From Octopus sinensis (taxonomy: Eukaryota): a stretch of 64,000 nucleotides of DNA. Location of the stretch: the NCBI RefSeq assembly GCF_006345805.1, contig NC_043024.1, forward strand, positions 16,988,001 through 17,052,000, in the 5' to 3' direction. Under the pieces are notes generated by a model. It was not told where the DNA came from and ran no database searches. It saw nothing but the letters and a program-made list of their open reading frames with translations. Below are positions 11,222 through 60,676 of this stretch, in pieces. The translations under genes were made by a program, and so were the position numbers. Every line of letters starts with the position of its first letter. Positions within the stretch are counted from its first letter, which is position 1.

Positions 11222-12380
11222 ACACATATATATATAATATGTATGTATATATGTATATGTCCATATGTATGTATACATATATATATGTATGTATATGTAT
11301 GTATACATATATGTATGTATATATACATATATATATATATGTATACATGTATATGTATGTATGTATACATATATATATGTATATATGTATACATGTATAT
11401 GTATGTATGTATACATATATATATGTATATATGTATACATATATATATATGTATGTATACATACATATATATATATATATGTATGTATACATATATATAT
11501 GTATGTATGTATACATATATATATATATAGTATGTATGTATACATATATATATGTATGTATGTAACATATATATATGTATACATATATATATATATATAT
11601 AATGTATATATATATATATGTATATATATATATTATATATATATATGTATGTATACATATATGTATGTATGTATACATATATGTATGTATGTATACATAT
11701 ATGTATGTATGTATACATATATGTATGTATGTATACATATATATGTATGTATGTATACATATATATATGTATGTATGTATACATATATATATGTATGTAT
11801 GTATACATATATATATGTATGTATGTATACATATATATATGTATGTATGTATACATATATATATGTATGTATGTATACATATATATATATGTATGTATGT
11901 ATACATATATATATATGTATGTATGTATACATATATATATATGTATGTATTATACATATATATATATGTATGTATGTATACATATATATATGTATGTATG
12001 TATACATATATTATATATATATGTATGTATCATATATATATATATGTATGTAGTATACATATATATATGTATGTATGTATATACATATATATATATATGT
12101 ATGTATGTATACATATATATATATATGTATGTATGTATATATATATATGTATATGTATGTATGTATACATATATATATATATGTATGTATGTATACATAT
12201 ATTATGTATGTATGTATACATATATATATATATGTATGTATGTATACATATATATGTATACATATATATGTATACATATTATATGTATACATATATATGT
12301 ATACATATATATATATATGTATATATATATATATGTATGTATACATATATATATATGTATACATATATATATATATATAT

Positions 12381-12425
<45 letters not shown>

Positions 12426-12675
12426 TATGTATGTATACATATATATATGTATGTATGTATGTATACATATATATGTATACATATATTCTATCGGTCTATT
12501 TCATTGAACCATTAAGTTATGGGGGCATATATATGTATACATATATATATGTATGTATGTATACATATATATATGTATACATACATACATATATATATAT
12601 ATATTATATATATATATGTATATGTATGTATATACATTTATATATGTATATATATACATATATATATGTATATAA
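11222..12675. repeat. Compound (TA)n/(TATG)n microsatellite, about 1.45 kb
   Basis: Directly visible; source of the long Y/I/M/C/V ORFs. Confidence 0.97.
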
Positions 12676-13507: not shown

Positions 13508-13899
13508 CTTTTACTCTTTTACTTGCTTCAGTCATTTGACTGTGGCCATGCTGGAGCACCGCCTTTAGTCAAGCAAACTGAACCCTGGACTTATTCTCTG
13601 TAAGCCCAGTACTTATTCTATCAATATCTTTTGCCAAACTGCTAAGTTACGGGAAGGTAAAAACAACAGCATCGGTTGTCAAGCAATGTTGAGGGGACAA
13701 ACACAGACACACACACATACACATATACATATATACGACGGGCTTCTTTCAGTTTCCGTCTACCAGATCCACTCACAAGGGTTTGGTCGGCCTGTGGCCA
13801 TAGTAGAAGACACTTGCCGAAGGTACCACACAGTGGGACTGAACCCAGAACCATGTGGTTAGTAAGCAAACTACTTACCACACAGCCACTCCTACGCCT
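13508..13899 (-). mobile_element. SINE family A, full length
   Basis: Head, internal microsatellite and tail all present. Confidence 0.9.
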
Positions 13900-14764
13900 A
13901 TAAATGTCTTCTCTTTTCTTTTTCTTACTTGTCTCTCTCTTTCCATTTCTCTTTTGTCTCCTTCCACATCTTTGTCTCCATCATCTCCCAACATCATTGT
14001 CTTCTGTCTCCTTCATTTCTTATCTCCTTTAATCTATTTTCTCTCCCCAAGACCATCAAACCCAGTCAACCGATCACATAAATTCACTGATAAATCTAAT
14101 AAAGTCTATTAAAGTATTGTAAAAGGACAAAAATGTTGGATGATTTCCAACAAGGTTTACATTGGAACTGGGAAAAACACAGAATCACCCCTCCATGTCT
14201 GTCTGTCTACCTAAATGCCAGCTTCTGTGACTGTCTCTTTCTTTCTCTTTCTCTCCTTCTCTCTCTGTCTATCTCTTCTCTGTTTCTCTCTCTCCCCCTC
14301 TCTCGTTCTCTCTGTCTCTCTCTGCTCTGTCTGTCTCCCTTTCACCACTCTCTTTCATTCTCTTTTCAGTCTATTATATATATATATATATATAATAATA
14401 ATTATTATTTGAGGGAATAAAATCCAAACTTACAAGGAAAAAAAATTCAATTAGATGTCTTGCAAACAACTTGCACATGCAAGTGCTACCAGTTAAAAGC
14501 TCCGTATATCGGAAGCTAGCAAGTGTATGGGGTCATCAAATTCCACACAATATAATATATATAAAATATTAGGAAAAAAACCCACCTTTTATTAATTCAA
14601 AATGAATAATTAAATTACACCATCTAGAAAATTACATATAATAGGAAAGTTAAAATTAAAATAACAATTAAAAAGTAAAGATTAAGTAAATTACAAAAAT
14701 AATATAATGTATATAATAGGTAGAAAAACATACACACACACACACACACACATGCTTGTCTATA

Positions 14765-15246: not shown

Positions 15247-15650
15247 CTTTTACTCTTTTACTTGTTTCAGTCATTTGACTGTGGCCATGCTGGAGCACCA
15301 CCTTTAGTCGAGCAAATCGACCCCAGGACTTATTCTTTGTAAGCCCAGTACTTATTATATCAGTCTTTTTTGCCGAACTGCTAAGTTACGGGGACATCAA
15401 CACACCAGCATCGGTTGTCAAGCAATGTTGGGCGGACAAACACATGCAGACACACATGCACACTCACACACACATATAGATATATACGACAGGCTTCTTT
15501 CAGTTTCCATCTACCAAATCCACTCACAAGGCTTTGGTCGTTCTAATGCTATAGTAGAAGATACTTGCCCAAGGTGCCACGCAGTGGGACTGAACCTGGA
15601 ACCATGTGGTTGGTAAGCAAGCTACTTACCACACAGCCACTCCTGTGTCT
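15247..15650 (-). mobile_element. SINE family A, full length
   Basis: Head and tail match. Confidence 0.9.
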
Positions 15651-15849
15651 ATATATATATTCACCATAAAAATCTAGGGATGTTTTAACAGATCACTAAT
15701 GTGTATATAAAAATTAATAAAAACAGCTGTTTGCAACATTATACCGTAACTAAACTTGACTAACAGAGTCAAGTTTAGTTACAGTATATTGCTAGACATA
15801 GGAGCTAAAATGCTCCAATGCTGTTACAAAATCACATAGCACATACCAG

Positions 15850-17629: not shown

Positions 17630-17880
17630 TTAATCCAAACATGAACAAAGAGAAAATACAAGAACGCAAGGACGTGGAATAAGTATAGTGTTATTGGATG
17701 CTCAGGAAAGGAAAGAAAGAAGGAGGATTTAACATTTCAAGCGGAGCTCTTCATCAGAAATATAGCAAAAAGGAAAAAGTTCTAGAAAGGGAAGATAGAG
17801 AAAGAAAATCACCAACGATACACACGCAGTCACATATTGAAACAACTGGAAGGGAATGGGTGAAGAAAAAGTTCTATATA
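17630..17880 (-). mobile_element. Family E element with minimal hammerhead motif (probable Penelope-like terminal repeat)
   Basis: Minus strand ATTT-CTGATGA-A-GAGC-TCC-GCTT-GAAA-TG-TT-AAAT at 17727-17761; 3' end ggattaac(TA)n shared with the 49.5-kb copy. Confidence 0.7.
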
Positions 17881-18399: not shown

Positions 18400-18634
18400 A
18401 CATACACACACGCACATATATATACACATACATATATAGACATATACACACACACATATATATATATGTATGTGTATGTATATATATATGTGTGTGTATA
18501 TGTATATATATGTATATATGTGTGTATATGTGTATATATGTATATATATGTATATATGTATATATATGTATATATGTATATATATGTATATATGTATATA
18601 TATATATATATGTGTATATATGTATATATATATA

Positions 18635-18665
<31 letters not shown>

Positions 18666-18672
18666 GTGTGTG

Positions 18673-18704
<32 letters not shown>

Positions 18705-18780
18705 TATGTATATATATATATGTATATATGTATGTAAATATGTATATGTGTGTATATATATATATATATTATATATATAT

Positions 18781-18813
<33 letters not shown>

Positions 18814-18846
18814 GTGTGTTTTATATATATATATATATATACACAC

Positions 18847-18889
<43 letters not shown>

Positions 18890-18897
18890 GGTATATA

Positions 18898-18949
<52 letters not shown>

Positions 18950-19019
18950 ATATATATATACATATACATATATACATATATATATGTGTATGTACATGTA
19001 TGTATATTATGTATATATA

Positions 19020-19092
<73 letters not shown>

Positions 19093-19150
19093 GTGTATGT
19101 ACATGTATGTATGTATATATATGTGGTATATATATATATGGTGGTGTGGG
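18400..19150. repeat. (TA)/(CA)/(TATG) compound microsatellite
   Basis: Directly visible. Confidence 0.95.
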
Positions 19151-19390: not shown

Positions 19391-19437
<47 letters not shown>

Positions 19438-19573
19438 GAGGGCATTATACATACATGCCAGAGGGCATTATACATACATGCCACACGCTAAGAGGGACAA
19501 TTAGTCATTTCTACCAAAAATTTTACTAATCCCACCGAATGCAATTTTTCAAAGTAAGACATTTAAAAAATAT

Positions 19574-19621
19574 AGACCTGTATCACAGTGATTTCATACT
19601 TACGTATTCATCAGCAGGCCT
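19574..19621 (-). ncRNA. Type I hammerhead ribozyme, identical mirror copy
   Basis: Exact reverse complement of 19761-19808. Confidence 0.85.
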
Positions 19622-19760
19622 GGAGGTATCATAAATAAACGACCCTGCCTCGCTTAAGCCGATCAGCTAACTGATCAACATCAACGAAGCACATGGGTGA
19701 GTTTACATATATTACATCCGGTAAATGGCAGACTTTTACGAATTGCATTATGATACCTCC

Positions 19761-19808
19761 AGGCCTGCTGATGAATACGTAAGTATGAAATCACTGTGAT
19801 ACAGGTCT
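19761..19808 (+). ncRNA. Type I hammerhead ribozyme, canonical core
   Basis: Stem I AGGCCTG/CAGGTCT (7 bp, one G-U); CTGATGA; stem II ATAC-GTAA-GTAT; GAAA; stem III ATCAC-T-GTGAT; predicted cleavage AUA^ after 19801. Confidence 0.85.
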
Positions 19809-20114
19809 ATATTTTTTAAATGTCTTACTTTGAAAAATTGCATTCAGTGGGATTAGTAAAATTTTTGGTAGAAATGACTAATTGTCCCTCTTAGCGTGTG
19901 GCATGTATGTATAATGCCCTCTGGCATGTATGTATAATGCCGTCTGGCATGTATGTATAATGCCCTCTATATATAAATTAATATGTTCAATAAGAAATAA
20001 TTATTTTCGAAATTTTTCTCTTATGAGGTTTTTCACGCTATCTACCTGACAATTTTTTGTTAAGTTTTCCTTATTAAGTAGTTGTCCTTAATTGCTATAT
20101 ATATATATATATAT

Positions 20115-21692: not shown

Positions 21693-21694
21693 AA

Positions 21695-21809
21695 CCAACC
21701 ACATGGTCCCAGGTTTAGTCCCACTGCATGGCACCATGTAGCTTCTACTATCACCTTGAACTGACTAAAGCCTTGTGAGTGGATTTGGTAGACAGAAACT
21801 GAAAGAATC

Positions 21810-21873
<64 letters not shown>

Positions 21874-22080
21874 ACATATTTGTGTGTCCTCCCACCATCT
21901 GTTGAGAACTGATGTTGGTATTTTTATGTCCCCCATAACTTGGTGGCTCAGCAAAAGAGACCGATAGAATAAGTATTAGGCTTACAAAGAATAAATTCTG
22001 GGGTAGATGTGTTTGACTAAAGATTGTGCTCCAGCATGGCCACAGTCAACTGACTGAAACAAGTAAAAGAATAAAAGAAT
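21695..22080 (+). mobile_element. SINE family A (5'-clipped)
   Basis: Head remnant, (TA)n/(TG)n and complete tail. Confidence 0.85.
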
Positions 22081-22239
22081 ATATATATACAGAGACATGC
22101 CAAAAGTAAATAGGCACTCTTATAATCATCAAAATGTATTTAAATCTTAAATTATACATTTACATTATTTATTAGTGGTTATAATGTTAATATTTAATAT
22201 TTAGTTGACAAATCCTTTGCATTTTTCAATGCAAGGACC

Positions 22240-24683: not shown

Positions 24684-24795
24684 TATAAAAATAATAATAA
24701 TGATGATGATGATGCTGATGATGATGATGATGAATGATGATGATGATGATGATGATATGATGATGATGATTGATGATTGATGATGATGATGATGA

Positions 24796-24874
<79 letters not shown>

Positions 24875-24889
24875 GATGATGATGATGAT

Positions 24890-24934
<45 letters not shown>

Positions 24935-25057
24935 GATGATGATGATGAGATGATGATGATGATGATGATGTGATGATGATGAGTGATGATGATGATGATG
25001 ATGAGATGATGATGATGTGATGATGATGATGATGATGATGATAATGATGATGATGAT

Positions 25058-25102
<45 letters not shown>

Positions 25103-25120
25103 TGATGATGATGATGATGA

Positions 25121-25187
<67 letters not shown>
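24651..25187. repeat. (AAT)n followed by ~480 bp of (GAT)n
   Basis: Directly visible. Confidence 0.97.
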
Positions 25188-25190
<3 letters not shown>

Positions 25191-39629: not shown

Positions 39630-40385
39630 TATGTGTGTGTGTGGTAAGAAGCTTTCTTCCCAACTACATGGTTCTGGGTTCAGTCCTACTGCATGGCACC
39701 TTGGGCAAGTGTCTTCTACTATAGCCTCGGGCTGACCAAAGCCTTGTGAGTGAATTTAGTAGAGAGAAACTGAAAGAAGCCTTTCGTATGTGTGTGTGTG
39801 TGTGTGTGTTTGTCCCCCACCCTCCCATCGCTTGACAACCTTTGTTTACATCCCTGTAACCTAGCTGTTCAGCAAAAGAGACTGATAGAATAAGTACTAG
39901 GCTTACAAAGAATAAATCCTGTGGTCAATTTGTTCAACTAAAGGTGGTGCTCCAGCATGACCACAGTCAAATGACTGAAACCAGTAAAAGAGTATATATA
40001 TGTGTGCATAGGTGTAGGCATGGCTGTGAAGTTAGAAGCTTGCTTTCTAACCACATGGTTCTGGGTTCAGTCTCACTGCATGGAATCTTAGGCAAGAGTC
40101 TTCTACTCTTGCCTCAGGCTGACCAAAGCCTTGTGAGTGGATTTGATAGATGGAAACTGAAATAAGCCTATCATATATATATATGTATGCGTGTGTGCAT
40201 TTTTGTGTTTGTTTGTCCCCTACCACCACAAGACAACCAGTGCTGGTGTGTTTACATCCCCATCCCCCAGTGGCTCAGCAGAAGAGACTATTAGCATAAG
40301 TACTAAGCTTAAAATAATAAGTCCTAGTGTCGATTTCTTAGACTAAAACCCTTCAACACAGCATGGTCGCAGTCAAAGGACTAAA
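39630..40385 (+). mobile_element. Two tandem SINE family A copies
   Basis: Copies at about 39630-39992 and 40010-40385. Confidence 0.85.
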
Positions 40386-40700
40386 ACACACACACACACA
40401 CACATGTAAAATCAATTAAAACAGTGCAGTTACCTTGCAATGAGGAGTGGAAAATCCAACGTTTCAGATAAAGTTCTTTTTCAGTTGGAAAGTCAGAAGG
40501 AGTGAAATGAAAGAAATAAAGAAGAGTTTTAAATAATTTAAGTTTAAATAAAATGGTTGCAACTGATAAGGCCAAGACAGAAAGTTCCAATGGCTGCAGA
40601 CACAGAAATCTTTTGTTTTAAATTAAATTTGAATATTGCAAGCAATATGGTGCAAGCCAAGAAAGATGGGAAAAGATAGCAAAGATAGCTATTCATAGTA

Positions 40701-43292: not shown

Positions 43293-46200
43293 TCACTTGC
43301 CTCAATGGGTCTTCACAAGCAGAGTTTCGACATGCCACCGGCACTGGTAGCACATCCGCAATTTCCATTGATCGATTTCGATTCTGATCCTCACTTGCCT
43401 CAACACGTCTTCACAAGTAGAGTTTTGTGTCCCAAGAAGGGAAGGTATGCATACGTAGGCTGGCTCCATCCCATGTAGAAGGCCACGGGTTGTGGACTCA
43501 CTTGTCCTGCCGGGTCTTCTCGCGCACAGCACACTTCCAGAGGTCTCGGTCTCTAGTCATTTCCTCAGTGAGACCTAAAGTTCGAAGGTCGTGCTTCACC
43601 ACCTCGTCCAGGTTTTCCTGGGTCTGCCTCTTCCACAGGTTCCCTCAACCGCTAGGGTGTGGCACTTTTTCACACAACTATCTTCATCCATTCTCGCCAC
43701 ATGACCATACCAGCGCAAACGTCTCTCTTGCACACCACAACTGATGCTTCTTAGGTCCAGCTTTTCTCTCAAGGTACTTACACTCTGCCGAGTGTGAGTA
43801 CCGGCATTACACATCCATCGGAGCATACTGGCTTCATTTCTAGCAAGCTTACGCATATCCTCAGCAGTCACGGCCCATGTTTCACTGCCATGTAGCATGG
43901 CTGTTCGTACACACGCATCATACAGTCTGCCTTTCACTCTGTGCGAGAGGCCTTTTGTCACCAGCAGAGGTAAGAGCTCTCTGAACTTTGCCCAAGCTAT
44001 TCTTACTCTAGCAGTTACACTTTCAGCACACCCACCCCCGCTGCTGACTGGTCACCTAGGTAACGGAAACTATCAACTATTTCTAGTTTTTCTCCCTGGA
44101 AAGTGACGGAGGTTGGTCTCAGAGCATTTTCAGTGTTTATTGTTCCTGAGCATCTGCCACATACAAAAACCATCTTCCTAGTTAGCCTTCCTTTGATATT
44201 GCTGCATCTCTTATGTGTCCATAGCTTACACTTGGTGCATCTTATAGAGTTTCTACCTACACCTTTTCTACAGATCGAGCAGGGCCATCTACCTGAAGGT
44301 GTTTGTGATTTGTCTACTTCCTACTGATTACGACTTTGGTTTTAGCTAGATTGACTCTGAGGCCCTTCGATTCAAATCCTTGTTTCCACACCTGAAACTT
44401 CTCCTCCAGTTCTGATAGCGACTCAGCAATTAGAGCAAGGTCATCAGCATAGAGGAGCTCCCAAGGGCATCCTGTCTTGAATTCCTCCGTTATTGCCTGG
44501 AGGACTATGATAAATAGGAGGGGGCTGAGTACTGAGCCTTGGTGGACCCCTACCTCTACCCGGAATTCTTCACTGTACTCATTTCCAACCCTCACCCTAC
44601 TAGCGGCGTCCCTATACATGGCCCGCACAGCTCTCACTAACCATTCATCTATCCCTAGTTTTCTCATTGCCCACCAGATAAGGGATCGGGGGACCCTGTC
44701 GAAGGCTTTCTCATGTCAACAAAAGCCAGGTACAGGGGCTTATCTTTGGCTAGGTATTTCTCCTGCAGCTGCCTTACCAGGAATATAGCATCAGTAGTAC
44801 TTTTCCCTGGCACCAACCCAAACTGCATCTCATCTAAACTAACTCTCTCTCTAATTAGTTGGGCTATGACCCTCTCCATAACCTTCATCACCTGGTCCAA
44901 CAGCTTGATACCTCTGTAGTTATTTGTATCTAGGGCATCACAATACCTTTGTAGCAGTTGACTATTATACTGCTACACCAGTCATTGGGTATGACCCCTT
45001 TGTGTATCACCTGATTAACTATATGGGTGACTAGGCTATAGCCGACACTACCAGACATTTTGAGCATCTCTGCAGTGATTCCTGATGGGCCTGGGGCTTT
45101 CCCTGTCTTCATGCTTCTAATTGCCTTAGCTACCACAGAACTATCAACTCGGATAGCTGGTCCCTCTGTTGGGTCAACATTCGGCAGACTCTCTTTATCC
45201 CATTCATTTTCTTCATTCAGCAACCTTTCATAGTGGCATCTCCAAACCTCTCTCTTCGCATCCTCATTTAGCGCAAGTGAACCATCTTCCATGCGAACAC
45301 ACTTCTCTCCTACCACATCACGATTCTCTCTCAAACACTGTCTTGCAACACGAAACACCTCCAGTCTTTGGTCCTCACGGCACAGAACATTGGCTAATTT
45401 TTCTTATCTGCTTCCCCTCTGGCTAAATAACCTGTCTCCTAGCTTCTCTTTTGGCAGTCTGATACAATTCCCTGCTACCCCCATTTTTCCAGACCTTCCA
45501 AGCCTGTCTCTTTTCTCTAATAGCCCTGTCTACAATATTGTTCCACCACCACGTTATTCTAGGTCGAGAGGGGACTTTGCACCAGCCACAGATCTGGTCA
45601 GTGGCTCTCAGCAGGTTTTCCCTTAGAAACGTCCAGCTGTCTTCTACCCCCTGTGATGCTCTATCCCCTTCTACTTCGTCAGAGGCTTCAAGTAATATGT
45701 CCCTAAATCTCTGTCCATTTGCAGGATCTTTAAGCTTCCAGATCCTTCTTCTCCATATTTGTCGTCTTCTGGTTGTCCTCCTAGTCCTGATCCTAAAGTC
45801 ACTAACTACCAGTCTATGTTGTGGGGTACATTCTTCACCTGGGAAGGTTTTGGCATTTATAAGCAGCCATCTCTCCCTTTGCCTTGTAAGGATGTAGTCA
45901 ATTTGGCTGGTATGTTGGCCCGATTGGTAAGTGACTAGGTGGCTGGTAGGTTTCCTGAAGTTAGTGTTGCAAATCATAAGATTATTTGCATCGCAGAACT
46001 CCAGCAGCCTGGTTCCCTCCTCGTTGCGGGAGCCATAGCCATAGCCTCCATGTATGCCATGGAAGCCCCCAGCATGTCGTCCAACGTGACATTGAAGTCA
46101 CCAGCCACAAAGATAAGGTCTCTGTCGTCGTCAATGAGGTAGTCTGCAGTAGTAGAGTGTCATAGAATCAGTCTTTCTGTCCATCGGGTAGCCCCGACTG

Positions 46201-47780: not shown

Positions 47781-48071
47781 CAACATGCAATTTCACATCA
47801 GGAGTTTTGCAAAATGAATTGATAAATGTGTATATATATATAATGGAAATATTAAAATTACTAAGTCTCTCTAAAAGAGAACAACGGCAGCGTTCCCGGA
47901 AAATATTAGTTATCGCCATACTAATATGGCATTCTTATAAAAATAAGAATAAAGCTGTCCGCTTATTAGCTCCATGAGGCCATCGCCTTAAGTTAGCTAT
48001 TTGATACACAAACTGTATCCATATAACCTTTGAACAAGGGAGGTCAGTCGCTCCACACTACTTGGCCGGCA

Positions 48072-48113
48072 GCTACAGACGCGTTTCGGGGTATTGCCCC
48101 TTTTCAATGCAGC
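48072..48113 (-). ncRNA. Type I hammerhead ribozyme, U3-A8 variant, inverted copy
   Basis: Reverse complement of the 48452 motif, with stem II loop CAATA. Confidence 0.8.
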
Positions 48114-48451
48114 GTAGCCAAACCAGTAGCTGCCGGCCAAGTAGTGTGGAGCGACTGACCTCCCTTGTTCAAAGGTTATATGGATACAGTTTGTGTATCA
48201 AATAGCTAACTTAAGGCGATGGCCTCATGGAGCTAATAAGCGGACAGCTTTATTCTTATTTTTATAAGAATGCCATATTAGTATGGCGATAACTAATATT
48301 TTCCGGGAACGCTGCCGTTGTTCTCTTTTAGAGAGACTTAGTAATTTTAATATTTCTATTATTGAAAACAAGTGGATGTATTCCACCGAAGCTAGGTAAA
48401 TAAAACCTTTGAACAGAGATTGTCAGAAGCGACACCTACTGGTCTGGCTAC

Positions 48452-48493
48452 GCTGCATTGAAAAGGGGGAATACCCCGAAACGCGTCTGTAGC
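48452..48493 (+). ncRNA. Type I hammerhead ribozyme, U3-A8 core variant
   Basis: Stem I GCTGCA/TGTAGC; core TTGAAAA; stem II GGGG-GAATA-CCCC; GAAAC-GC-GTC^ (palindromic ACGCGT); predicted cut after 48487. Confidence 0.8.
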
Positions 48494-48714
48494 TGCCGGC
48501 CAAGTAGTGTGGAGCGACTGACCTCCCTTGTTCAAAGGTTATATGGATACAGTTTGTGTATCAAATAGCTAACTTAAGGTGATGGCCTCATGAAGCTAAT
48601 AAGCGGACAGCTTTATTCTTATTTTTATAAGAATGCCATATTAGTATGGTGATAACTAATATATATATATATATATACAACTAAAAATAAGGGTGTCTGA
48701 GACATATATATATA

Positions 48715-49095
48715 TATTCTTTCTTTTATTTGTTTCAGTCATTTAACTGCAGCCATGCTGGAGCACCACCTTTAGTCAAACAAATCGACCCCTGGACTTA
48801 AGCTTTGTAAGCCTAGTACTTGTTCTATCGGTCTCTTTTGCCGAACTGATAAGTTACGGGAATGTGAACACACCAATATCTGTTGTCAACCGATGATTGG
48901 GGGACAAACACAGACACACAAACACACACACACACACACATACATATATATATATGATGGGCTTTTTTTAGTTTCTGTCTACTGGCCCGAGACTACAATA
49001 GAAGACACTTGCCCAAGGTGCCACACAGTGGGACTGAACCCGGAACCATGTGGTTGGTAAACAAGCTACTTACCACACAGCCACTCCTGCACCTA
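48715..49095 (-). mobile_element. SINE family A, full length
   Basis: Head and tail match. Confidence 0.9.
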
Positions 49096-49226
49096 TTGAT
49101 ATATATATATATATTATATATATATGACCATTGTACCACTCTCTTTCTCTCTCCATCTGTGTATTATATTCTACCTACAACTCTTGACCTCACTCTAAAA
49201 CTCATTCTGTTTCTTTTCTAAATCAG

Positions 49227-53060: not shown

Positions 53061-54733
53061 CATGTAGACCTGTCCAGCTCTACACCATGTACAACCTTTG
53101 GCCATGTACAAGCTCTAACCATGACCAAGCTCTGGACCATGTACAAGCTCTGGTTATGTACAAGCTCTGGTTGTGTACAAGCTCTGGCCACATGCAAGCT
53201 CTGGCCGTATGCAAGCTTTGGCCATGTACAAGCTCTAACCATGACCAAGCTCTGGACCATGTACAAGCTCTGGTTATGTACAAGCTCTGGCCACATGCAA
53301 GCTCTGGCCGTATGCAAGCTTTGGCCATGTACAAGCTCTAACCATGACCAAGCTCTGGACCATGACCAAGCTCTGGACCATGTACAAGCTCTGGTTGTGT
53401 ACAAGCTCTGGCCACATGCAAGCTCTGGCCGTATGCAAGCTTTGGCCATGTACAAGCTCTAACCATGACCAAGCTCTGGACCATGACCAAGCTCTGGACC
53501 ATGTACAAGCTCTGGTTGTGTACAAGCTCTGGCCGTATGCAAGCTTTGGCCATGTACAAGCTCTAACCATGACCAAGCTCTGGACCATGTACAAGCTCTG
53601 GTTGTGTACAAGCTCTGGCCACATGCAAGCTCTGGCCATGTACAAGCTCTAACCATGACCAAGCTCTGGACCATGTACAAGCTCTGGCTATGTACAAGCT
53701 CTGGCCACATGCAAGCTCTGGCCGTATGCAAGCTTTGGCCATGTACAAGCTCTAACCGTGACCAAGCTCTGGACCATGTACAAGCTCTGGTTATGTACAA
53801 GCTCTGGCCACATGCAAGCTCTGGCCATGTACAAGCTCTAACCATGACCAAGCTCTGGACCATGTACAAGCTCTGGCTATGTACAAGCTCTGGCCACATG
53901 CAAGCTCTGGCCGTATGCAAGCTTTGGCCATGTACAAGCTCTAACCATGACCAAGCTCTGGACCATGTACAAGCTCTGGCTATGTACAAGCTCTGGCCAC
54001 ATGCAAGCTCTGGCCGTATGCAAGCTTTGGCCATGTACAAGCTCTAACCATGACCAAGCTCTGGACCATGTACAAGCTCTGGCCACATGTAAGCTCTGGC
54101 CGTATGCAAGCTTTGGCCATGTACAAGCTCTAACCATGACCAAGCTCTGGACCATGTACAAGCTCTGGTTATGTACAAGCTCTGGCCACATGCAAGCTCT
54201 GGCCGTATGCAAGCTTTGGCCATGTACAAGCTCTAACCATGACCAAGCTCTGGACCATGTACAAGCTCTGGTTATGTACAAGCTCTGGCCACATGCAAGT
54301 CCTGGCCATGTACAAGCTCTAACCATGACCAAGCTCTGGACCATGTACAAGCTCTGGCTATGTACAAGCTCTGGCCACATGCAAGCTCTGGCCGTATGCA
54401 AGCTTTGGCCACGTACAAGCTCTAACCATGACCAAGCTCTGGACCATGTACAAGCTCTGGTTATGTACAAGCTCTGGCCACATGCAAGCTCTGGCCATGT
54501 ACAAGCTCTAACCATGACCAAGCTCTGGACCATGTACAAGCTCTGGTTATGTACAAGCTCTGGCCACATGCAAGTTCTGGCCATGTACAAGCTCTAACCA
54601 TGACCAAGCTCTGGACCATGTACAAGCTCTGGTTATGTACAAGCTCTGGCCACATGCAAGTTCTGGCCATGTACAAGCTCTAACCATGACCAAGCTCTGG
54701 ACCATGTACAAGCTCTGGTTATGTACAAGCTCT
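53061..54733. repeat. Higher-order minisatellite (17-bp monomers in 86/103-bp units)
   Basis: Monomers A ggccatgtacaagctct, B aaccatgaccaagctct, C ggaccatgtacaagctct, D ggttatgtacaagctct, E ggccacatgcaagctct, F ggccgtatgcaagcttt; about 17 B copies. Confidence 0.95.
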
Positions 54734-59223: not shown

Positions 59224-59590
59224 TTTAGTTTGCTTACCAACCACATGATTCCGGGTTCAGTCCCACTGCATGGCAGCTTGGGCAAATGTCTTCTACTATA
59301 GCCTCGGGCTGACTGAAGCCTTGTGAGTTGATTTGGTAGACAGAAATTGAAAAGAAGCCCGTCATATATATATATATATATACATATATGTATATATATG
59401 TGTGTGTGTTTGTGTGTCTGTGTTTGTCCCCCAACATCACTTGACAACTGATGCTGGTGTGTTTACGTTCCCCGTAACTTAGCGGTTCGGCAAAAGAGAT
59501 CGATAGAATAAGTACTAGGCTAACAAAGTATAAGTCCTGGGGACTATTTGCTCGACTAAAGGCGGTGCTCCAAAAGAGAGTAAAAGAGAT
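59224..59590 (+). mobile_element. SINE family A
   Basis: Head (5'-clipped) and tail match. Confidence 0.85.
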
Positions 59591-60104
59591 ATGCACACAT
59601 ATATATACATGCGTGTGTGCACACACTCGCACACCTGCATACATACATATATACATACATACACAGACATACATCATTTTTGTTTGTCTGCTGGAACAAC
59701 AAGGACCATCTAATCATCCGAGGATAACCAAGATGTCCTGCTTGCCTCATCTTGCTCTCTGCACACCACAAAATGTTACCGTAATGGCCTTCCCCTCTGT
59801 GGAGCCATGGAGATTTCTTCTACAGAGTTCACTGAATTGAGTCTTCTCATGCACAGGTACGCAAGCCTTAATATATTAATTAAACCATAACTGGGACCTT
59901 GATAAGGGTTACTTCTCTGGGTTAGAGTAGCAGACATGAGAACAATATTGGCAACTTGGGAATGTACCTTCTACTGCCTTAGCTGATGCATTGGTTGTGA
60001 GTGACTTCGGTAGACAGAAGCTGGAAGAACCTGTTTTGTGTGTGTGTGTGTGGTTTGGCAAAAGGGTGCGATAGAATAAGCTCCAGACTTTAAAAAAAAC
60101 CTAG

Positions 60105-60255
60105 TGGCTGTGTGGTAAGAAGCTTGCTTTACAACCGCATGTGTCCGAGTATAGTCCCACTGTGTGGCACCTTGGGCATGTATCTTCTACTATAGCCTCG
60201 GGCCAACCAAAGCCTTGTGAGTGGATTTGGTAGGCGGAAACTGAAAGAAGCCTGT

Positions 60256-60286
<31 letters not shown>

Positions 60287-60307
60287 GTGCATGTGTGTGC
60301 ATGTGTG

Positions 60308-60341
<34 letters not shown>

Positions 60342-60545
60342 TGTATTGTGTGTCTGTATTTGTCCTCCTACCATCACTTGACAACCGTTGTTGGTGTGTT
60401 TATACCCCTGTAACTAAGCTGTTCAGCAAAAGAGACCAATAGAATAAGTACTAGACTTACAAAGAGCAAGTCCTGGAGTCGATCTGTTCAACTAAAGGCA
60501 GTACTCCAGCATGACCACAGTCAAATGACTGAAACAATTACAAGA
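60105..60545 (+). mobile_element. SINE family A, full length
   Basis: Head and tail match. Confidence 0.85.
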
Positions 60546-60676
60546 ATAAAACAATATATACTGGAATTGATTCGTTTGGCTAAAGTTCTTCTAGGCAGTG
60601 CCCCAGCATGGCCACAGTCTAATAACTGAAACCAGTCATTAGAAATAAATGCTAAAAATAGATATAAACCCTAGAC

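What the first reader, a model, noticed from the sequence alone, without database searches (positions are those of the whole stretch)
19427..19978. Young fold-back element with a complete hammerhead ribozyme in each arm
Seen: ~197-bp inverted arms with one mismatch noticed, a 113-bp spacer and 23-bp terminal repeats. Each arm holds a full type I HHR reading outward: 7-bp stem I, CUGAUGA, stem II with a GUAA (GNRA) loop, GAAA, and a palindromic stem III ATCAC-T-GTGAT. Known: Penelope-like elements carry minimal type I HHRs with palindromic helix III in their terminal repeats and often insert with an inverted 5' repeat. Inference: this is a recent non-coding, ribozyme-processed mobile unit that looks like a MITE but is probably RNA-derived. 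A transcript from either strand would carry one HHR but could also fold into ~200-bp dsRNA that masks it.
Basis: partly seen in the sequence, partly recalled or inferred. Interest (0 to 1): 0.9.

Follow-up and report, generated by a model that had tools for sequence, protein, structure and literature searches.

The report
Twin inverted hammerhead-ribozyme retroelement copies
Two almost identical, head-to-head copies of a short ribozyme-carrying retroelement sit inside a TA microsatellite of an animal genome; this looks like the normal insertion footprint of Penelope-like or retrozyme elements, not a new kind of mobile element.

Summary
Arms 19437-19634 and 19748-19945 are 198 nt with 2 mismatches, separated by 113 nt. 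A 23-nt unit is repeated 2x at the left end and 3x at the right. Each arm carries a complete type I hammerhead (HHR) motif reading outward (+ 19761-19808, cut 19801|19802; mirror on the minus strand). These are the only hits to an explicit HHR descriptor in the window, and 400 random 64-kb sequences gave none. Rfam aligns the core in register but far below threshold (16.7 vs 52 bits), and pair 10.1-11.1 is A-U rather than G-C. No other copy could be found because the source genome is not in any searchable collection. A second, unrelated locus in the window (47840-48662) has the same architecture with a PLE-type minimal HHR. There, a third copy proves that the "spacer" is the extra 5' sequence of the longer inverted copy, and one copy starts 1 nt from the predicted ribozyme cut. 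Published PLE biology (both DNA strands cut and extended, inverted 5'-truncated copies, (TA)n targets) predicts this structure. Best reading: a one-off, probably inert twin insertion of an HHR-bearing PLE/retrozyme-type unit, not a MITE-like mobile fold-back. New member of a known kind; moderate interest.

The parts
19392..19437 (.). (TA)23 microsatellite plus TTTATATATA: target sequence on the left of the insertion
   Evidence: Tandem repeat finder and sequence. Only 2.5-3.6% of window positions are preceded by (TA)3-4.
19437..19634 (-). Left arm: inverted copy of the unit, 3' end pointing left, cut off 13 nt upstream of its HHR
   Evidence: 198-nt inverted repeat, 99% complementary; mismatches located.
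19437..19483 (-). Two copies of the 23-nt terminal unit (AGAGGGCATTATACATACATGCC on the + strand)
   Evidence: period 23, 2.0 copies, 100% matches.
19574..19621 (-). Left hammerhead motif (type I), predicted cut between 19581 and 19580
   Evidence: Descriptor hit with 7/4/4 bp; exact mirror of the right motif.
19635..19747 (.). 113-nt asymmetric centre. Inferred to be the extra 5' sequence of the longer copy, probably the right (+ strand) one. GC 42%, 6 CpG.
   Evidence: Arm boundaries are abrupt. The last 26 nt repeat a segment of the right arm in direct orientation. By analogy, the spacer of the second locus is proven to be a 5' extension.
19748..19968 (+). Right arm: direct copy of the unit, 3' end pointing right (198 nt paired with the left arm plus one extra 23-nt unit)
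19761..19808 (+). Right hammerhead motif (type I): helix I 7 bp, CUGAUGA, helix II 4 bp with GUAA loop, GAA, helix III 4 bp with CUG loop, A17; cut between 19801 and 19802
   Evidence: Rfam HH9 model aligns the core in register at 16.7 bits. Dimer MFE is the double hammerhead.
19722..19749 (+). Direct repeat 1 bracketing the HHR (22/28 identical to 19817-19844)
   Evidence: family D6; none of 600 shuffles reached 22/28.
19817..19844 (+). Direct repeat 2 bracketing the HHR
19899..19968 (+). Three copies of the 23-nt terminal unit; the middle one carries the variant base (19942)
   Evidence: period 23, 3.0 copies, 95% matches.
19968..19978 (.). Right flank TATATATAAAT. TATATATA is repeated on both sides (a possible target-site duplication of up to 8 bp, uninformative inside a TA repeat), and the flank mirrors the left flank for 11 nt.

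Best explanation
The locus is the product of one retrotransposition event of a short (at least ~333 nt), non-coding, AT-rich unit that carries a type I hammerhead. The unit is of the kind found in Penelope-like-element pseudo-LTRs and animal non-LTR retrozymes. A PLE-type RT/GIY-YIG enzyme cut both strands of a (TA)n target and primed cDNA synthesis from both. That left two copies head to head with their 3' ends (the 23-nt repeats) pointing outward. One copy stops 13 nt upstream of its hammerhead. The other runs 113 nt further, and that stretch is the apparent 'spacer'. The 2-versus-3 difference in 23-nt units reflects an alternative start or slippage of reverse transcription, or later slippage. 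The hammerhead belongs to the parent's RNA life cycle, probably acting as a dimer between tandem units. At this locus each strand holds only one hammerhead, so no unit-length or circular RNA can be released, and a read-through transcript folds into a 198-bp hairpin. The locus is therefore most likely an inert, recent insertion. Shown: the anatomy, the non-random motif, the TA target, the youth, and the same architecture with a proven 5'-extension spacer at a second locus. Inferred: the enzyme, the RNA intermediate, the direction of the longer copy, and catalytic activity.
For: Anatomy. HHR motif is non-random and both copies read outward, towards the ends carrying the 23-nt repeats. Dimer MFE is the double hammerhead, -31.1 vs 2 x -12.1 kcal/mol. 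Literature: PLE insertions are strongly 5'-truncated, often have an inverted 5'-truncated copy directly adjacent, carry HHRs near their 3' ends, and prefer microsatellites including (TA)n (PMC8557442). A purified PLE protein cuts and extends both strands, starts RT at two adjacent internal sites (the one-sided 'tail'), and does not need HHR cleavage (PMC11167929). Pairs of HHRs 100-700 bp apart on opposite strands were seen in S. mansoni and ascribed to truncated PLEs (PMC4209133). Retrozymes have ~300-bp, <45% GC units, are related to PLE pLTRs, and solo copies are common; here the unit is 333 nt and 38.7% GC. In-window analogue at 47840-48662: inverted plus tandem copies in (TA)n, PLE-type min-HHR on both strands reading outward, spacer proven to be the longer copy's 5' part, and one copy starting 1 nt from the cut site. 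All four outer junctions abut TA runs, although only 2.5-3.6% of positions do.
Against: No other copy of this unit and no RT/GIY-YIG ORF could be linked to it. The window has none, and all external searches were empty because the source genome is not in the collections. Family-level conservation and covariation of the HHR are therefore untested. The HHR has A10.1-U11.1 instead of the conserved G-C. It scores 16.7 bits against a gathering score of 52 in Rfam. As a monomer it is not the MFE fold (-9.7 vs -12.1 kcal/mol; helix III probability ~0.03). The perfectly symmetric ends, the possible 8-bp TATATATA duplication and the palindromic target context would also suit a DNA transposon. The extra terminal piece is 23 nt, not the 30-40 nt described for PLE tails.
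Confidence: 0.7

Rival explanations
1. It is a genuine fold-back MITE: a non-autonomous DNA transposon with ~220-bp terminal inverted repeats built partly of 23-nt subrepeats, moved by a transposase (for example hAT-, Mutator/Foldback- or long-IR Tc1-like). Its arms happened to be built from, or captured, an HHR-bearing repeat.
For: The inverted repeat reaches both termini, with subterminal tandem repeats as in Foldback-type elements. TATATATA is present on both sides and the target context ATT-TATATATA-AAT is palindromic. No coding capacity. A weak sign of a Tc1-like transposase N-terminal (HTH) fragment in the window: only a sub-threshold HTH match. MITEs, Tc1/mariner, hAT and Mutator families are recently active in octopus if that is the host (PMC13282606).
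Against: The apparent duplication is uninformative inside a TA repeat. There is no second copy and no shared termini elsewhere in the window. It does not explain why the HHR reads outward in both arms or why the ends differ by one 23-nt unit in a 99%-identical young element. The second locus shows that fold-backs in this genome arise from differently truncated retro-copies, in a pattern no cut-and-paste element gives. No report of HHRs in MITEs turned up.
Confidence: 0.15
2. The HHR-like motif is a chance match inside a local inverted duplication or palindrome (replication fold-back or repair) and has never been a ribozyme.
For: One deviant conserved pair (A10.1-U11.1). Rfam score far below threshold. 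The monomer HHR fold is not the MFE. Extrapolating the descriptor rate (0.005 per 64 kb at 5/3/2 bp, about 0.38 per extra pair) gives roughly 4e-5 per 64 kb at 7/4/4 bp, so about one chance match per few Gb is possible, and the window was picked after a scan.
Against: 0 of 400 random windows hit at >=6/4/3 bp. All invariant core positions, U16.1 and H17 are present, and helix III is palindromic so the dimer is favoured. A second, independent HHR pair with the same architecture lies 28 kb away. Compensatory changes at 10.1/11.1 occur in natural HHRs (PMC2837043). Rfam also misses the second locus's min-HHR entirely.
Confidence: 0.07
3. The palindrome is an assembly or sequencing artefact (a fold-back chimeric read).
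For: PLE-type tandem/inverted structures are known to trouble assemblies (PMC8557442). Near-perfect palindromes are a typical artefact of some library types (own knowledge).
Against: The palindrome is short and has an asymmetric 113-nt centre. The arms differ by a CpG/TpG change and by one 23-nt unit. Its flanks are different unique sequences. A second, more complex structure of the same kind sits in the same window.
Confidence: 0.03

Closest known systems
Complex tandem/inverted insertions of Penelope-like elements (Evgen'ev & Arkhipova 2005; Craig et al. 2021, PMC8557442; Frangieh et al. 2024, PMC11167929)
   Same: Inverted 5'-truncated copy directly next to another copy; HHR on the sense strand reading towards the 3' end; insertion into a (TA)n microsatellite; one end longer than the other; HHR left uncleaved in the inserted copy.
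   Different: No RT/GIY-YIG ORF and no pseudo-LTR/ORF structure here; both copies are only ~200-330 nt. The extra terminal piece is one 23-nt repeat unit, not a 30-40-nt tail. The HHR is canonical-type rather than the minimal PLE type.
Dual HHRs on opposite strands in Schistosoma mansoni (Cervera & de la Pena 2014, PMC4209133)
   Same: Two HHR motifs ~100-700 bp apart on opposite strands, interpreted as truncated PLE copies; here the two cut sites are 221 nt apart.
   Different: Those are min-HHRs (helix II 7-8 bp, helix I 4-5 bp, no helix III). This one has helices of 7/4/4 bp and an A10.1-U11.1 pair. The second locus in this window (47840-48662) does carry the min-HHR type, including the U3-A8 covariant core described for Cercyon.
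Animal non-LTR retrozymes (Cervera & de la Pena 2020, PMC7229834; Li et al. 2026 preprint, 10.64898/2026.07.22.740005)
   Same: Non-coding, AT-rich (38.7% GC) unit of ~330 nt with a canonical-proportion type I HHR (helix I 6-7 bp, helix II 4 bp, palindromic helix III favouring dimers); solo or dead copies are common.
   Different: The defining head-to-tail tandem arrangement is absent, so two same-strand HHRs are not available and no circular RNA can form from this locus.
Foldback elements and long-TIR MITEs (DNA transposons)
   Same: Near-perfect long inverted arms reaching the termini, subterminal tandem repeats, small size, no ORF, TA-rich target.
   Different: No family, fixed target-site duplication or transposase partner could be shown. 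Outward-reading HHRs and unequal terminal repeats are not expected features.

Membership tests
Hammerhead ribozyme, type I | Invariant core C3 U4 G5 A6 N7 G8 A9 / G12 A13 A14 / A15.1-U16.1 / H17 | tested here: met
   CUGAUGA ... GAA A...U A at 19768-19801, identical on the minus strand.
Hammerhead ribozyme, type I | Three helices around the core, helix I open, helices II and III closed by loops | tested here: met
   7, 4 and 4 bp. These are the only descriptor hits in the window; 0 of 400 random sequences hit at >=6/4/3 bp.
Hammerhead ribozyme, type I | Conserved G10.1-C11.1 pair at the base of helix II | tested here: not met
   A10.1-U11.1. Pairing is kept, and compensatory changes at these positions occur in cricket satellite HHRs (PMC2837043), but this is a departure from the consensus (PMC4209133).
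Hammerhead ribozyme, type I | Score at or above the gathering threshold of an Rfam hammerhead model | tested here: not met
   No hit at gathering score. Hammerhead_HH9 scores 16.7 bits vs 52, E = 0.042 on 81 nt, with the core aligned in register. Rfam also misses the PLE-type min-HHR of the second locus.
Hammerhead ribozyme, type I | Site-specific self-cleavage; conservation or covariation among family copies | not testable with these tools
   No wet test is possible, and no other copy is retrievable.
PLE minimal HHR (Cervera & de la Pena 2014) | Long helix II (6-8 bp), short helix I (4-5 bp), unpaired nucleotide between A9 and 10.1, little or no helix III | tested here: not met
   Helix II 4 bp, helix I 7 bp, no bulge, helix III 4 bp against the definition. 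A dedicated min-HHR scan finds nothing at this locus.
PLE minimal HHR (Cervera & de la Pena 2014) | Palindromic positions 15.2-16.2 / loop 3, allowing a dimeric active form | tested here: met
   AUCAC-U-GUGAU. The two-copy MFE is the double hammerhead with a 5+5 bp helix III.
Penelope-like element insertion | Inverted 5'-truncated copy adjacent to another copy, 3' ends outward, HHR on the sense strand towards the 3' end | tested here: met
   definition; mechanism.
Penelope-like element insertion | Insertion bias for microsatellites such as (TA)n | tested here: met
   (TA)23 on the left and TATATATA on the right. The background frequency of TA-flanked positions is 2.5-3.6%.
Penelope-like element insertion | Optional 30-40-bp tail at one end | tested here: inconclusive
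   One end is longer, but by a 23-nt repeat unit.
Penelope-like element insertion | RT plus GIY-YIG ORF, or arms matching the pLTR of such an element | tested here: not met
   No ORF above 39 aa in the element. The window's only RT is a LINE type with RVT_1, whose relatives carry an exonuclease-type endonuclease and a PHD finger. A matching pLTR elsewhere in the genome could not be searched.
Non-LTR retrozyme | Head-to-tail tandem repeats, each with a type I HHR | tested here: not met
   The copies are inverted, and no direct repeat of the unit exists.
Non-LTR retrozyme | Non-coding unit of ~170-400 nt with low GC | tested here: met
   333 nt, 38.7% GC; definition.
MITE / fold-back DNA transposon | Constant-length target-site duplication and a family of copies with the same termini | tested here: inconclusive
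   Up to 8 bp of TATATATA on both sides, but inside a TA repeat. No second copy in 64 kb. The rest of the genome is not searchable.

The most novel reading that the evidence does not exclude
The fold-back itself is the propagating unit: a MITE-like, non-autonomous element whose two arms each carry an outward-reading hammerhead. It would spread either through a hairpin RNA trimmed by the ribozymes or through a DNA transposase that has adopted retroelement-derived arms. Alternatively, such loci are kept as sources of ribozyme-trimmed double-stranded RNA.
Probability: 0.1. Interest if true: 0.7.

Novelty: new member of a known kind. Interest (0 to 1): 0.4.

Why it matters
In itself the locus is an ordinary, probably dead insertion. 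Its value lies in two things. First, two unrelated HHR-bearing units in one 64-kb window both show the head-to-head footprint that the in vitro finding of PLE enzymes cutting and extending both DNA strands predicts, so they are genomic support for that mechanism. Second, at the neighbouring locus one copy begins 1 nt from the predicted ribozyme cut. The role of hammerheads in PLEs and retrozymes is still called unclear (PMC8557442), and RNA-seq found no ends at the cut site for an anole PLE (PMC11167929). A genome-wide tally of where retro-copies begin relative to HHR cut sites would be a cheap test of whether cleaved RNAs are used as templates in vivo. My literature searches found no description of hammerheads in cephalopods, if that is the host.

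Tried and rejected
- Rfam at gathering score on the whole window found nothing. At a permissive threshold on 641 nt it returned only microsatellite noise.
- Exact look-ups of ORFs inside the element and of thirteen window ORFs in all found none on record.
- A six-frame peptide query from arm plus spacer against 5.8 billion proteins gave no hit at E <= 10.
- DNA pattern scans of the metagenome, prokaryotic-genome and viral collections with the HHR, the helix II/core segment and the 23-nt repeat all returned zero.
- The window's LINE RT as query gave best hits at only ~40-44% identity. The one 70% hit led to a contig with no nucleotide similarity to the window.
- A SINE-derived peptide query meant to name the host gave one uninformative hit. 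The host therefore stays unidentified; my impression that the SINE-like repeats are octopus-like rests on memory only.
- Supplements of the key papers hold no searchable consensus sequences.
- The CUGAUGA..GAAA match at 17735-17757 was rejected as chance because it has no stems.
- A circular or tandem template shorter than the right copy was rejected because the start and end of 19635-19968 share no direct repeat.
- The copy boundaries at this locus do not coincide with the HHR cut site, unlike at the second locus.

Full report
**The observation.** The sequence at 19427-19978 is as described. Arms 19437-19634 and 19748-19945 are 198 nt and 99% complementary, with 113 nt between them. The two mismatches are 19440/19942 and 19536 C versus 19846 A, the latter a CpG/TpG difference. 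A 23-nt unit is repeated twice at the left end (19437-19483) and three times at the right end (19899-19968). If the extra, variant unit on the right is treated as an indel, the arms differ at one base. The inner edges of the arms are abrupt. The element lies at the right end of a (TA)23 run. TATATATA occurs on both sides and the flanks mirror each other for 11 nt, so any target-site duplication of up to 8 bp is hidden by the microsatellite. The element keeps more CpG than its surroundings (observed/expected 0.63 versus 0.34; six CpGs in the 113-nt centre), which fits a young insertion.

**The hammerhead.** On the + strand, 19761-19808 reads AGGCCUG / CUGAUGA / AUAC-GUAA-GUAU / GAA / AUCA-CUG-UGAU / A | CAGGUCU. 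The exact mirror lies on the minus strand at 19621-19574. I wrote an explicit descriptor (core, A15.1-U16.1, H17, three helices). It finds only these two sites in the window at every stringency tried. Among 400 random 64-kb sequences with the same dinucleotide make-up it found none at >=6/4/3 bp and 0.005 per sequence at >=5/3/2 bp. A third CUGAUGA..GAAA string at 17735-17757 has no helices.

Four cautions apply:
- Rfam gives no hit at gathering score. On 81 nt, the HH9 hammerhead model aligns the whole core in register but at 16.7 bits against a threshold of 52.
- Pair 10.1-11.1 is A-U, where G-C is described as highly conserved (PMC4209133). Compensatory changes at these positions are known in cricket satellite hammerheads (PMC2837043).
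- The monomeric hammerhead fold is 2.4 kcal/mol above the MFE, and helix III has about 3% probability.
It is 4 bp with a CUG loop in a monomer. Its near-palindromic sequence gives a 5+5 bp helix between two copies, and the two-copy MFE is exactly the double hammerhead (-31.1 versus 2 x -12.1 kcal/mol).

With helices of 7, 4 and 4 bp the motif resembles the canonical metazoan type I hammerhead (helix I 6 bp, helix II 4 bp, palindromic helix III), not the PLE minimal type. A dedicated min-HHR scan finds nothing at this locus.

**Search for relatives.** The window has no second copy. I tried exact look-ups of ORFs inside the element, a six-frame peptide search, and pattern scans of the metagenome, prokaryotic-genome and viral collections with three different parts of the element. 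All were empty. The host genome is not represented. The window's LINE RT finds relatives at only 40-44% identity, the single 70% hit comes from an unrelated contig, eleven other window ORFs (twelve counting the RT fragment) are not on record, and a SINE-derived query gave nothing useful. The repeats and microsatellites look cephalopod-like to me, but that is memory, not a result.

**A second locus in the same window.** A scan for long inverted repeats turned up a second young structure at 47840-48662 with no sequence similarity to the first. Alignment resolves it into three copies of one unit:
- A on the minus strand, from ~48128 down to 47840.
- B on the plus strand, 48126-48362.
- C on the plus strand, ~48437-48662, 363 nt downstream of B in register.

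A and B form a 237-nt, 100% fold-back with a 49-nt "spacer". Copy C carries that same 49-nt sequence contiguous with the arm, so the spacer is simply the 5' part of the longer inverted copy. A and C each contain a hammerhead of the PLE minimal type, again on opposite strands and reading outward: GCUGCA / UUGAAAA / GGGG-loop-CCCC / GAA / A-CGCG-U / C | UGUAGC. It has the U3-A8 covariant core reported for Cercyon PLEs, G10.1-C11.1 and a palindromic loop 3 (definition). The chance rate for this descriptor is 0.0025 per 64 kb. Rfam does not see it at all, so Rfam's silence counts for little with such variants. Its two-copy MFE is also the double hammerhead. Copy B begins at 48126, which is position 1.2, one nucleotide after the predicted cut (48487|48488 in copy C). 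It shares a 4-nt GTAG/CTAC overlap with the 5' end of copy A. Both outer ends abut TA repeats at AT-rich microhomologies. Only 2.5-3.6% of window positions are preceded by (TA)3-4, yet all four outer junctions of the two loci are.

**Mechanism.** Four points from the literature match these features:
- PLE insertions are strongly 5'-truncated and often organised as partial tandems. They often have an inverted 5'-truncated copy directly adjacent. They carry hammerheads near their 3' ends and prefer microsatellites, including (TA)n (PMC8557442).
- A purified PLE protein cuts and extends both DNA strands, unlike R2 and LINE-1. It starts reverse transcription at two adjacent internal sites, which explains a one-sided tail. 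It inserts hammerhead-dead RNA equally well (PMC11167929).
- Opposite-strand hammerhead pairs 100-700 bp apart were already noted in S. mansoni and attributed to truncated PLEs (PMC4209133).
- Animal retrozymes have non-coding ~300-bp units below 45% GC, are related to PLE pseudo-LTRs, and solo copies are common.

The first locus fits. It has two outward-pointing copies in a (TA)n target, a unit of 333 nt at 38.7% GC, an uncleaved hammerhead in each copy, and ends that differ by one 23-nt unit. I therefore read it as one twin insertion of a PLE/retrozyme-type unit, with confidence 0.7. The 113-nt centre is the extra 5' part of one copy. A 28-nt direct repeat brackets the right hammerhead (19722-19749 and 19817-19844, 22/28 identical; none of 600 shuffles reached that). 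It ties the centre to the arm sequence and mildly favours the right copy as the longer one. Why a hammerhead should be bracketed by direct repeats is unexplained.

**Consequences at this locus.** Each strand has a single hammerhead, so no unit-length or circular RNA can be cut out. A read-through transcript folds into a 198-bp hairpin at -382 kcal/mol that buries the ribozyme. The locus is probably inert, though it could yield double-stranded RNA.

**Rivals.**
- A true fold-back MITE moved by a transposase (0.15) is compatible with the symmetric ends, the subterminal repeats and a possible 8-bp duplication. It explains neither the outward hammerheads nor the unequal ends, and it has no support from other copies.
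- A chance motif in a local palindrome (0.07) is unlikely given the descriptor statistics and the second independent locus. By my extrapolation about one such chance match per few gigabases cannot be excluded.
- An assembly artefact (0.03) does not fit the asymmetric centre, the arm differences or the unique flanks.

**Verdict.** Most of that interest comes from two points. Both loci together display the footprint of priming on both DNA strands. And the neighbouring copy that starts at the ribozyme cut suggests a simple genome-wide test of hammerhead function in these elements.

Noticed in passing
window 47840-48662: Second, unrelated young fold-back plus tandem complex in a (TA)n run, made of three copies of one unit: A on the minus strand (~48128 down to 47840), B on the plus strand (48126-48362) and C on the plus strand (~48437-48662, 363 nt after B). 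A and B are 100% complementary over 237 nt. The 49-nt spacer is the 5' extension of copy A, proven by copy C. PLE-type minimal hammerheads with the U3-A8 covariant core (UUGAAAA) and a CGCG loop 3 lie at 48452-48493 (+) and 48113-48072 (-). Copy B starts 1 nt after the predicted cut, which suggests reverse transcription of a ribozyme-cleaved RNA.
   Followed up: yes
window 19722-19749 and 19817-19844: A 28-nt direct repeat (22/28 identical) brackets the right-arm hammerhead. None of 600 shuffles reached this score. Its meaning is unexplained.
   Followed up: partly
window 43596-45977 (minus strand): Broken LINE-type retrotransposon: four ORF fragments, one with an RVT_1 domain. The nearest database relatives (40-44% identity) carry an exonuclease-type endonuclease, RT and a PHD finger. 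It is not a Penelope-like element.
   Followed up: partly
window, e.g. 59226-59572, 15247-15660, 13508-13902, 21694-22088, 39631-40388, 48707-49111, 60103-60551: An abundant SINE-like repeat family (at least 14 copies at ~75-90% identity) with a TA/TG microsatellite inside the unit. From memory it resembles octopus SINEs, but the host could not be confirmed with the tools.
   Followed up: partly
window 53076-54733: A 1.7-kb satellite-like array with nested periods of 86, 103 and 189 nt built from a short CCATGTACAAGCTCTGG-type motif.
   Followed up: no
whole window: Strong CpG depletion (observed/expected 0.34) at 36.5% GC, with very dense TA, TG and ATG microsatellites (for example 11226-12674, 18416-19139, 24700-25188). 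This suggests a methylated animal genome.
   Followed up: no
window 17735-17757 (minus strand): An isolated CUGAUGA-N12-GAAA string in CT-rich sequence with no helices I or III; a chance core match.
   Followed up: yes
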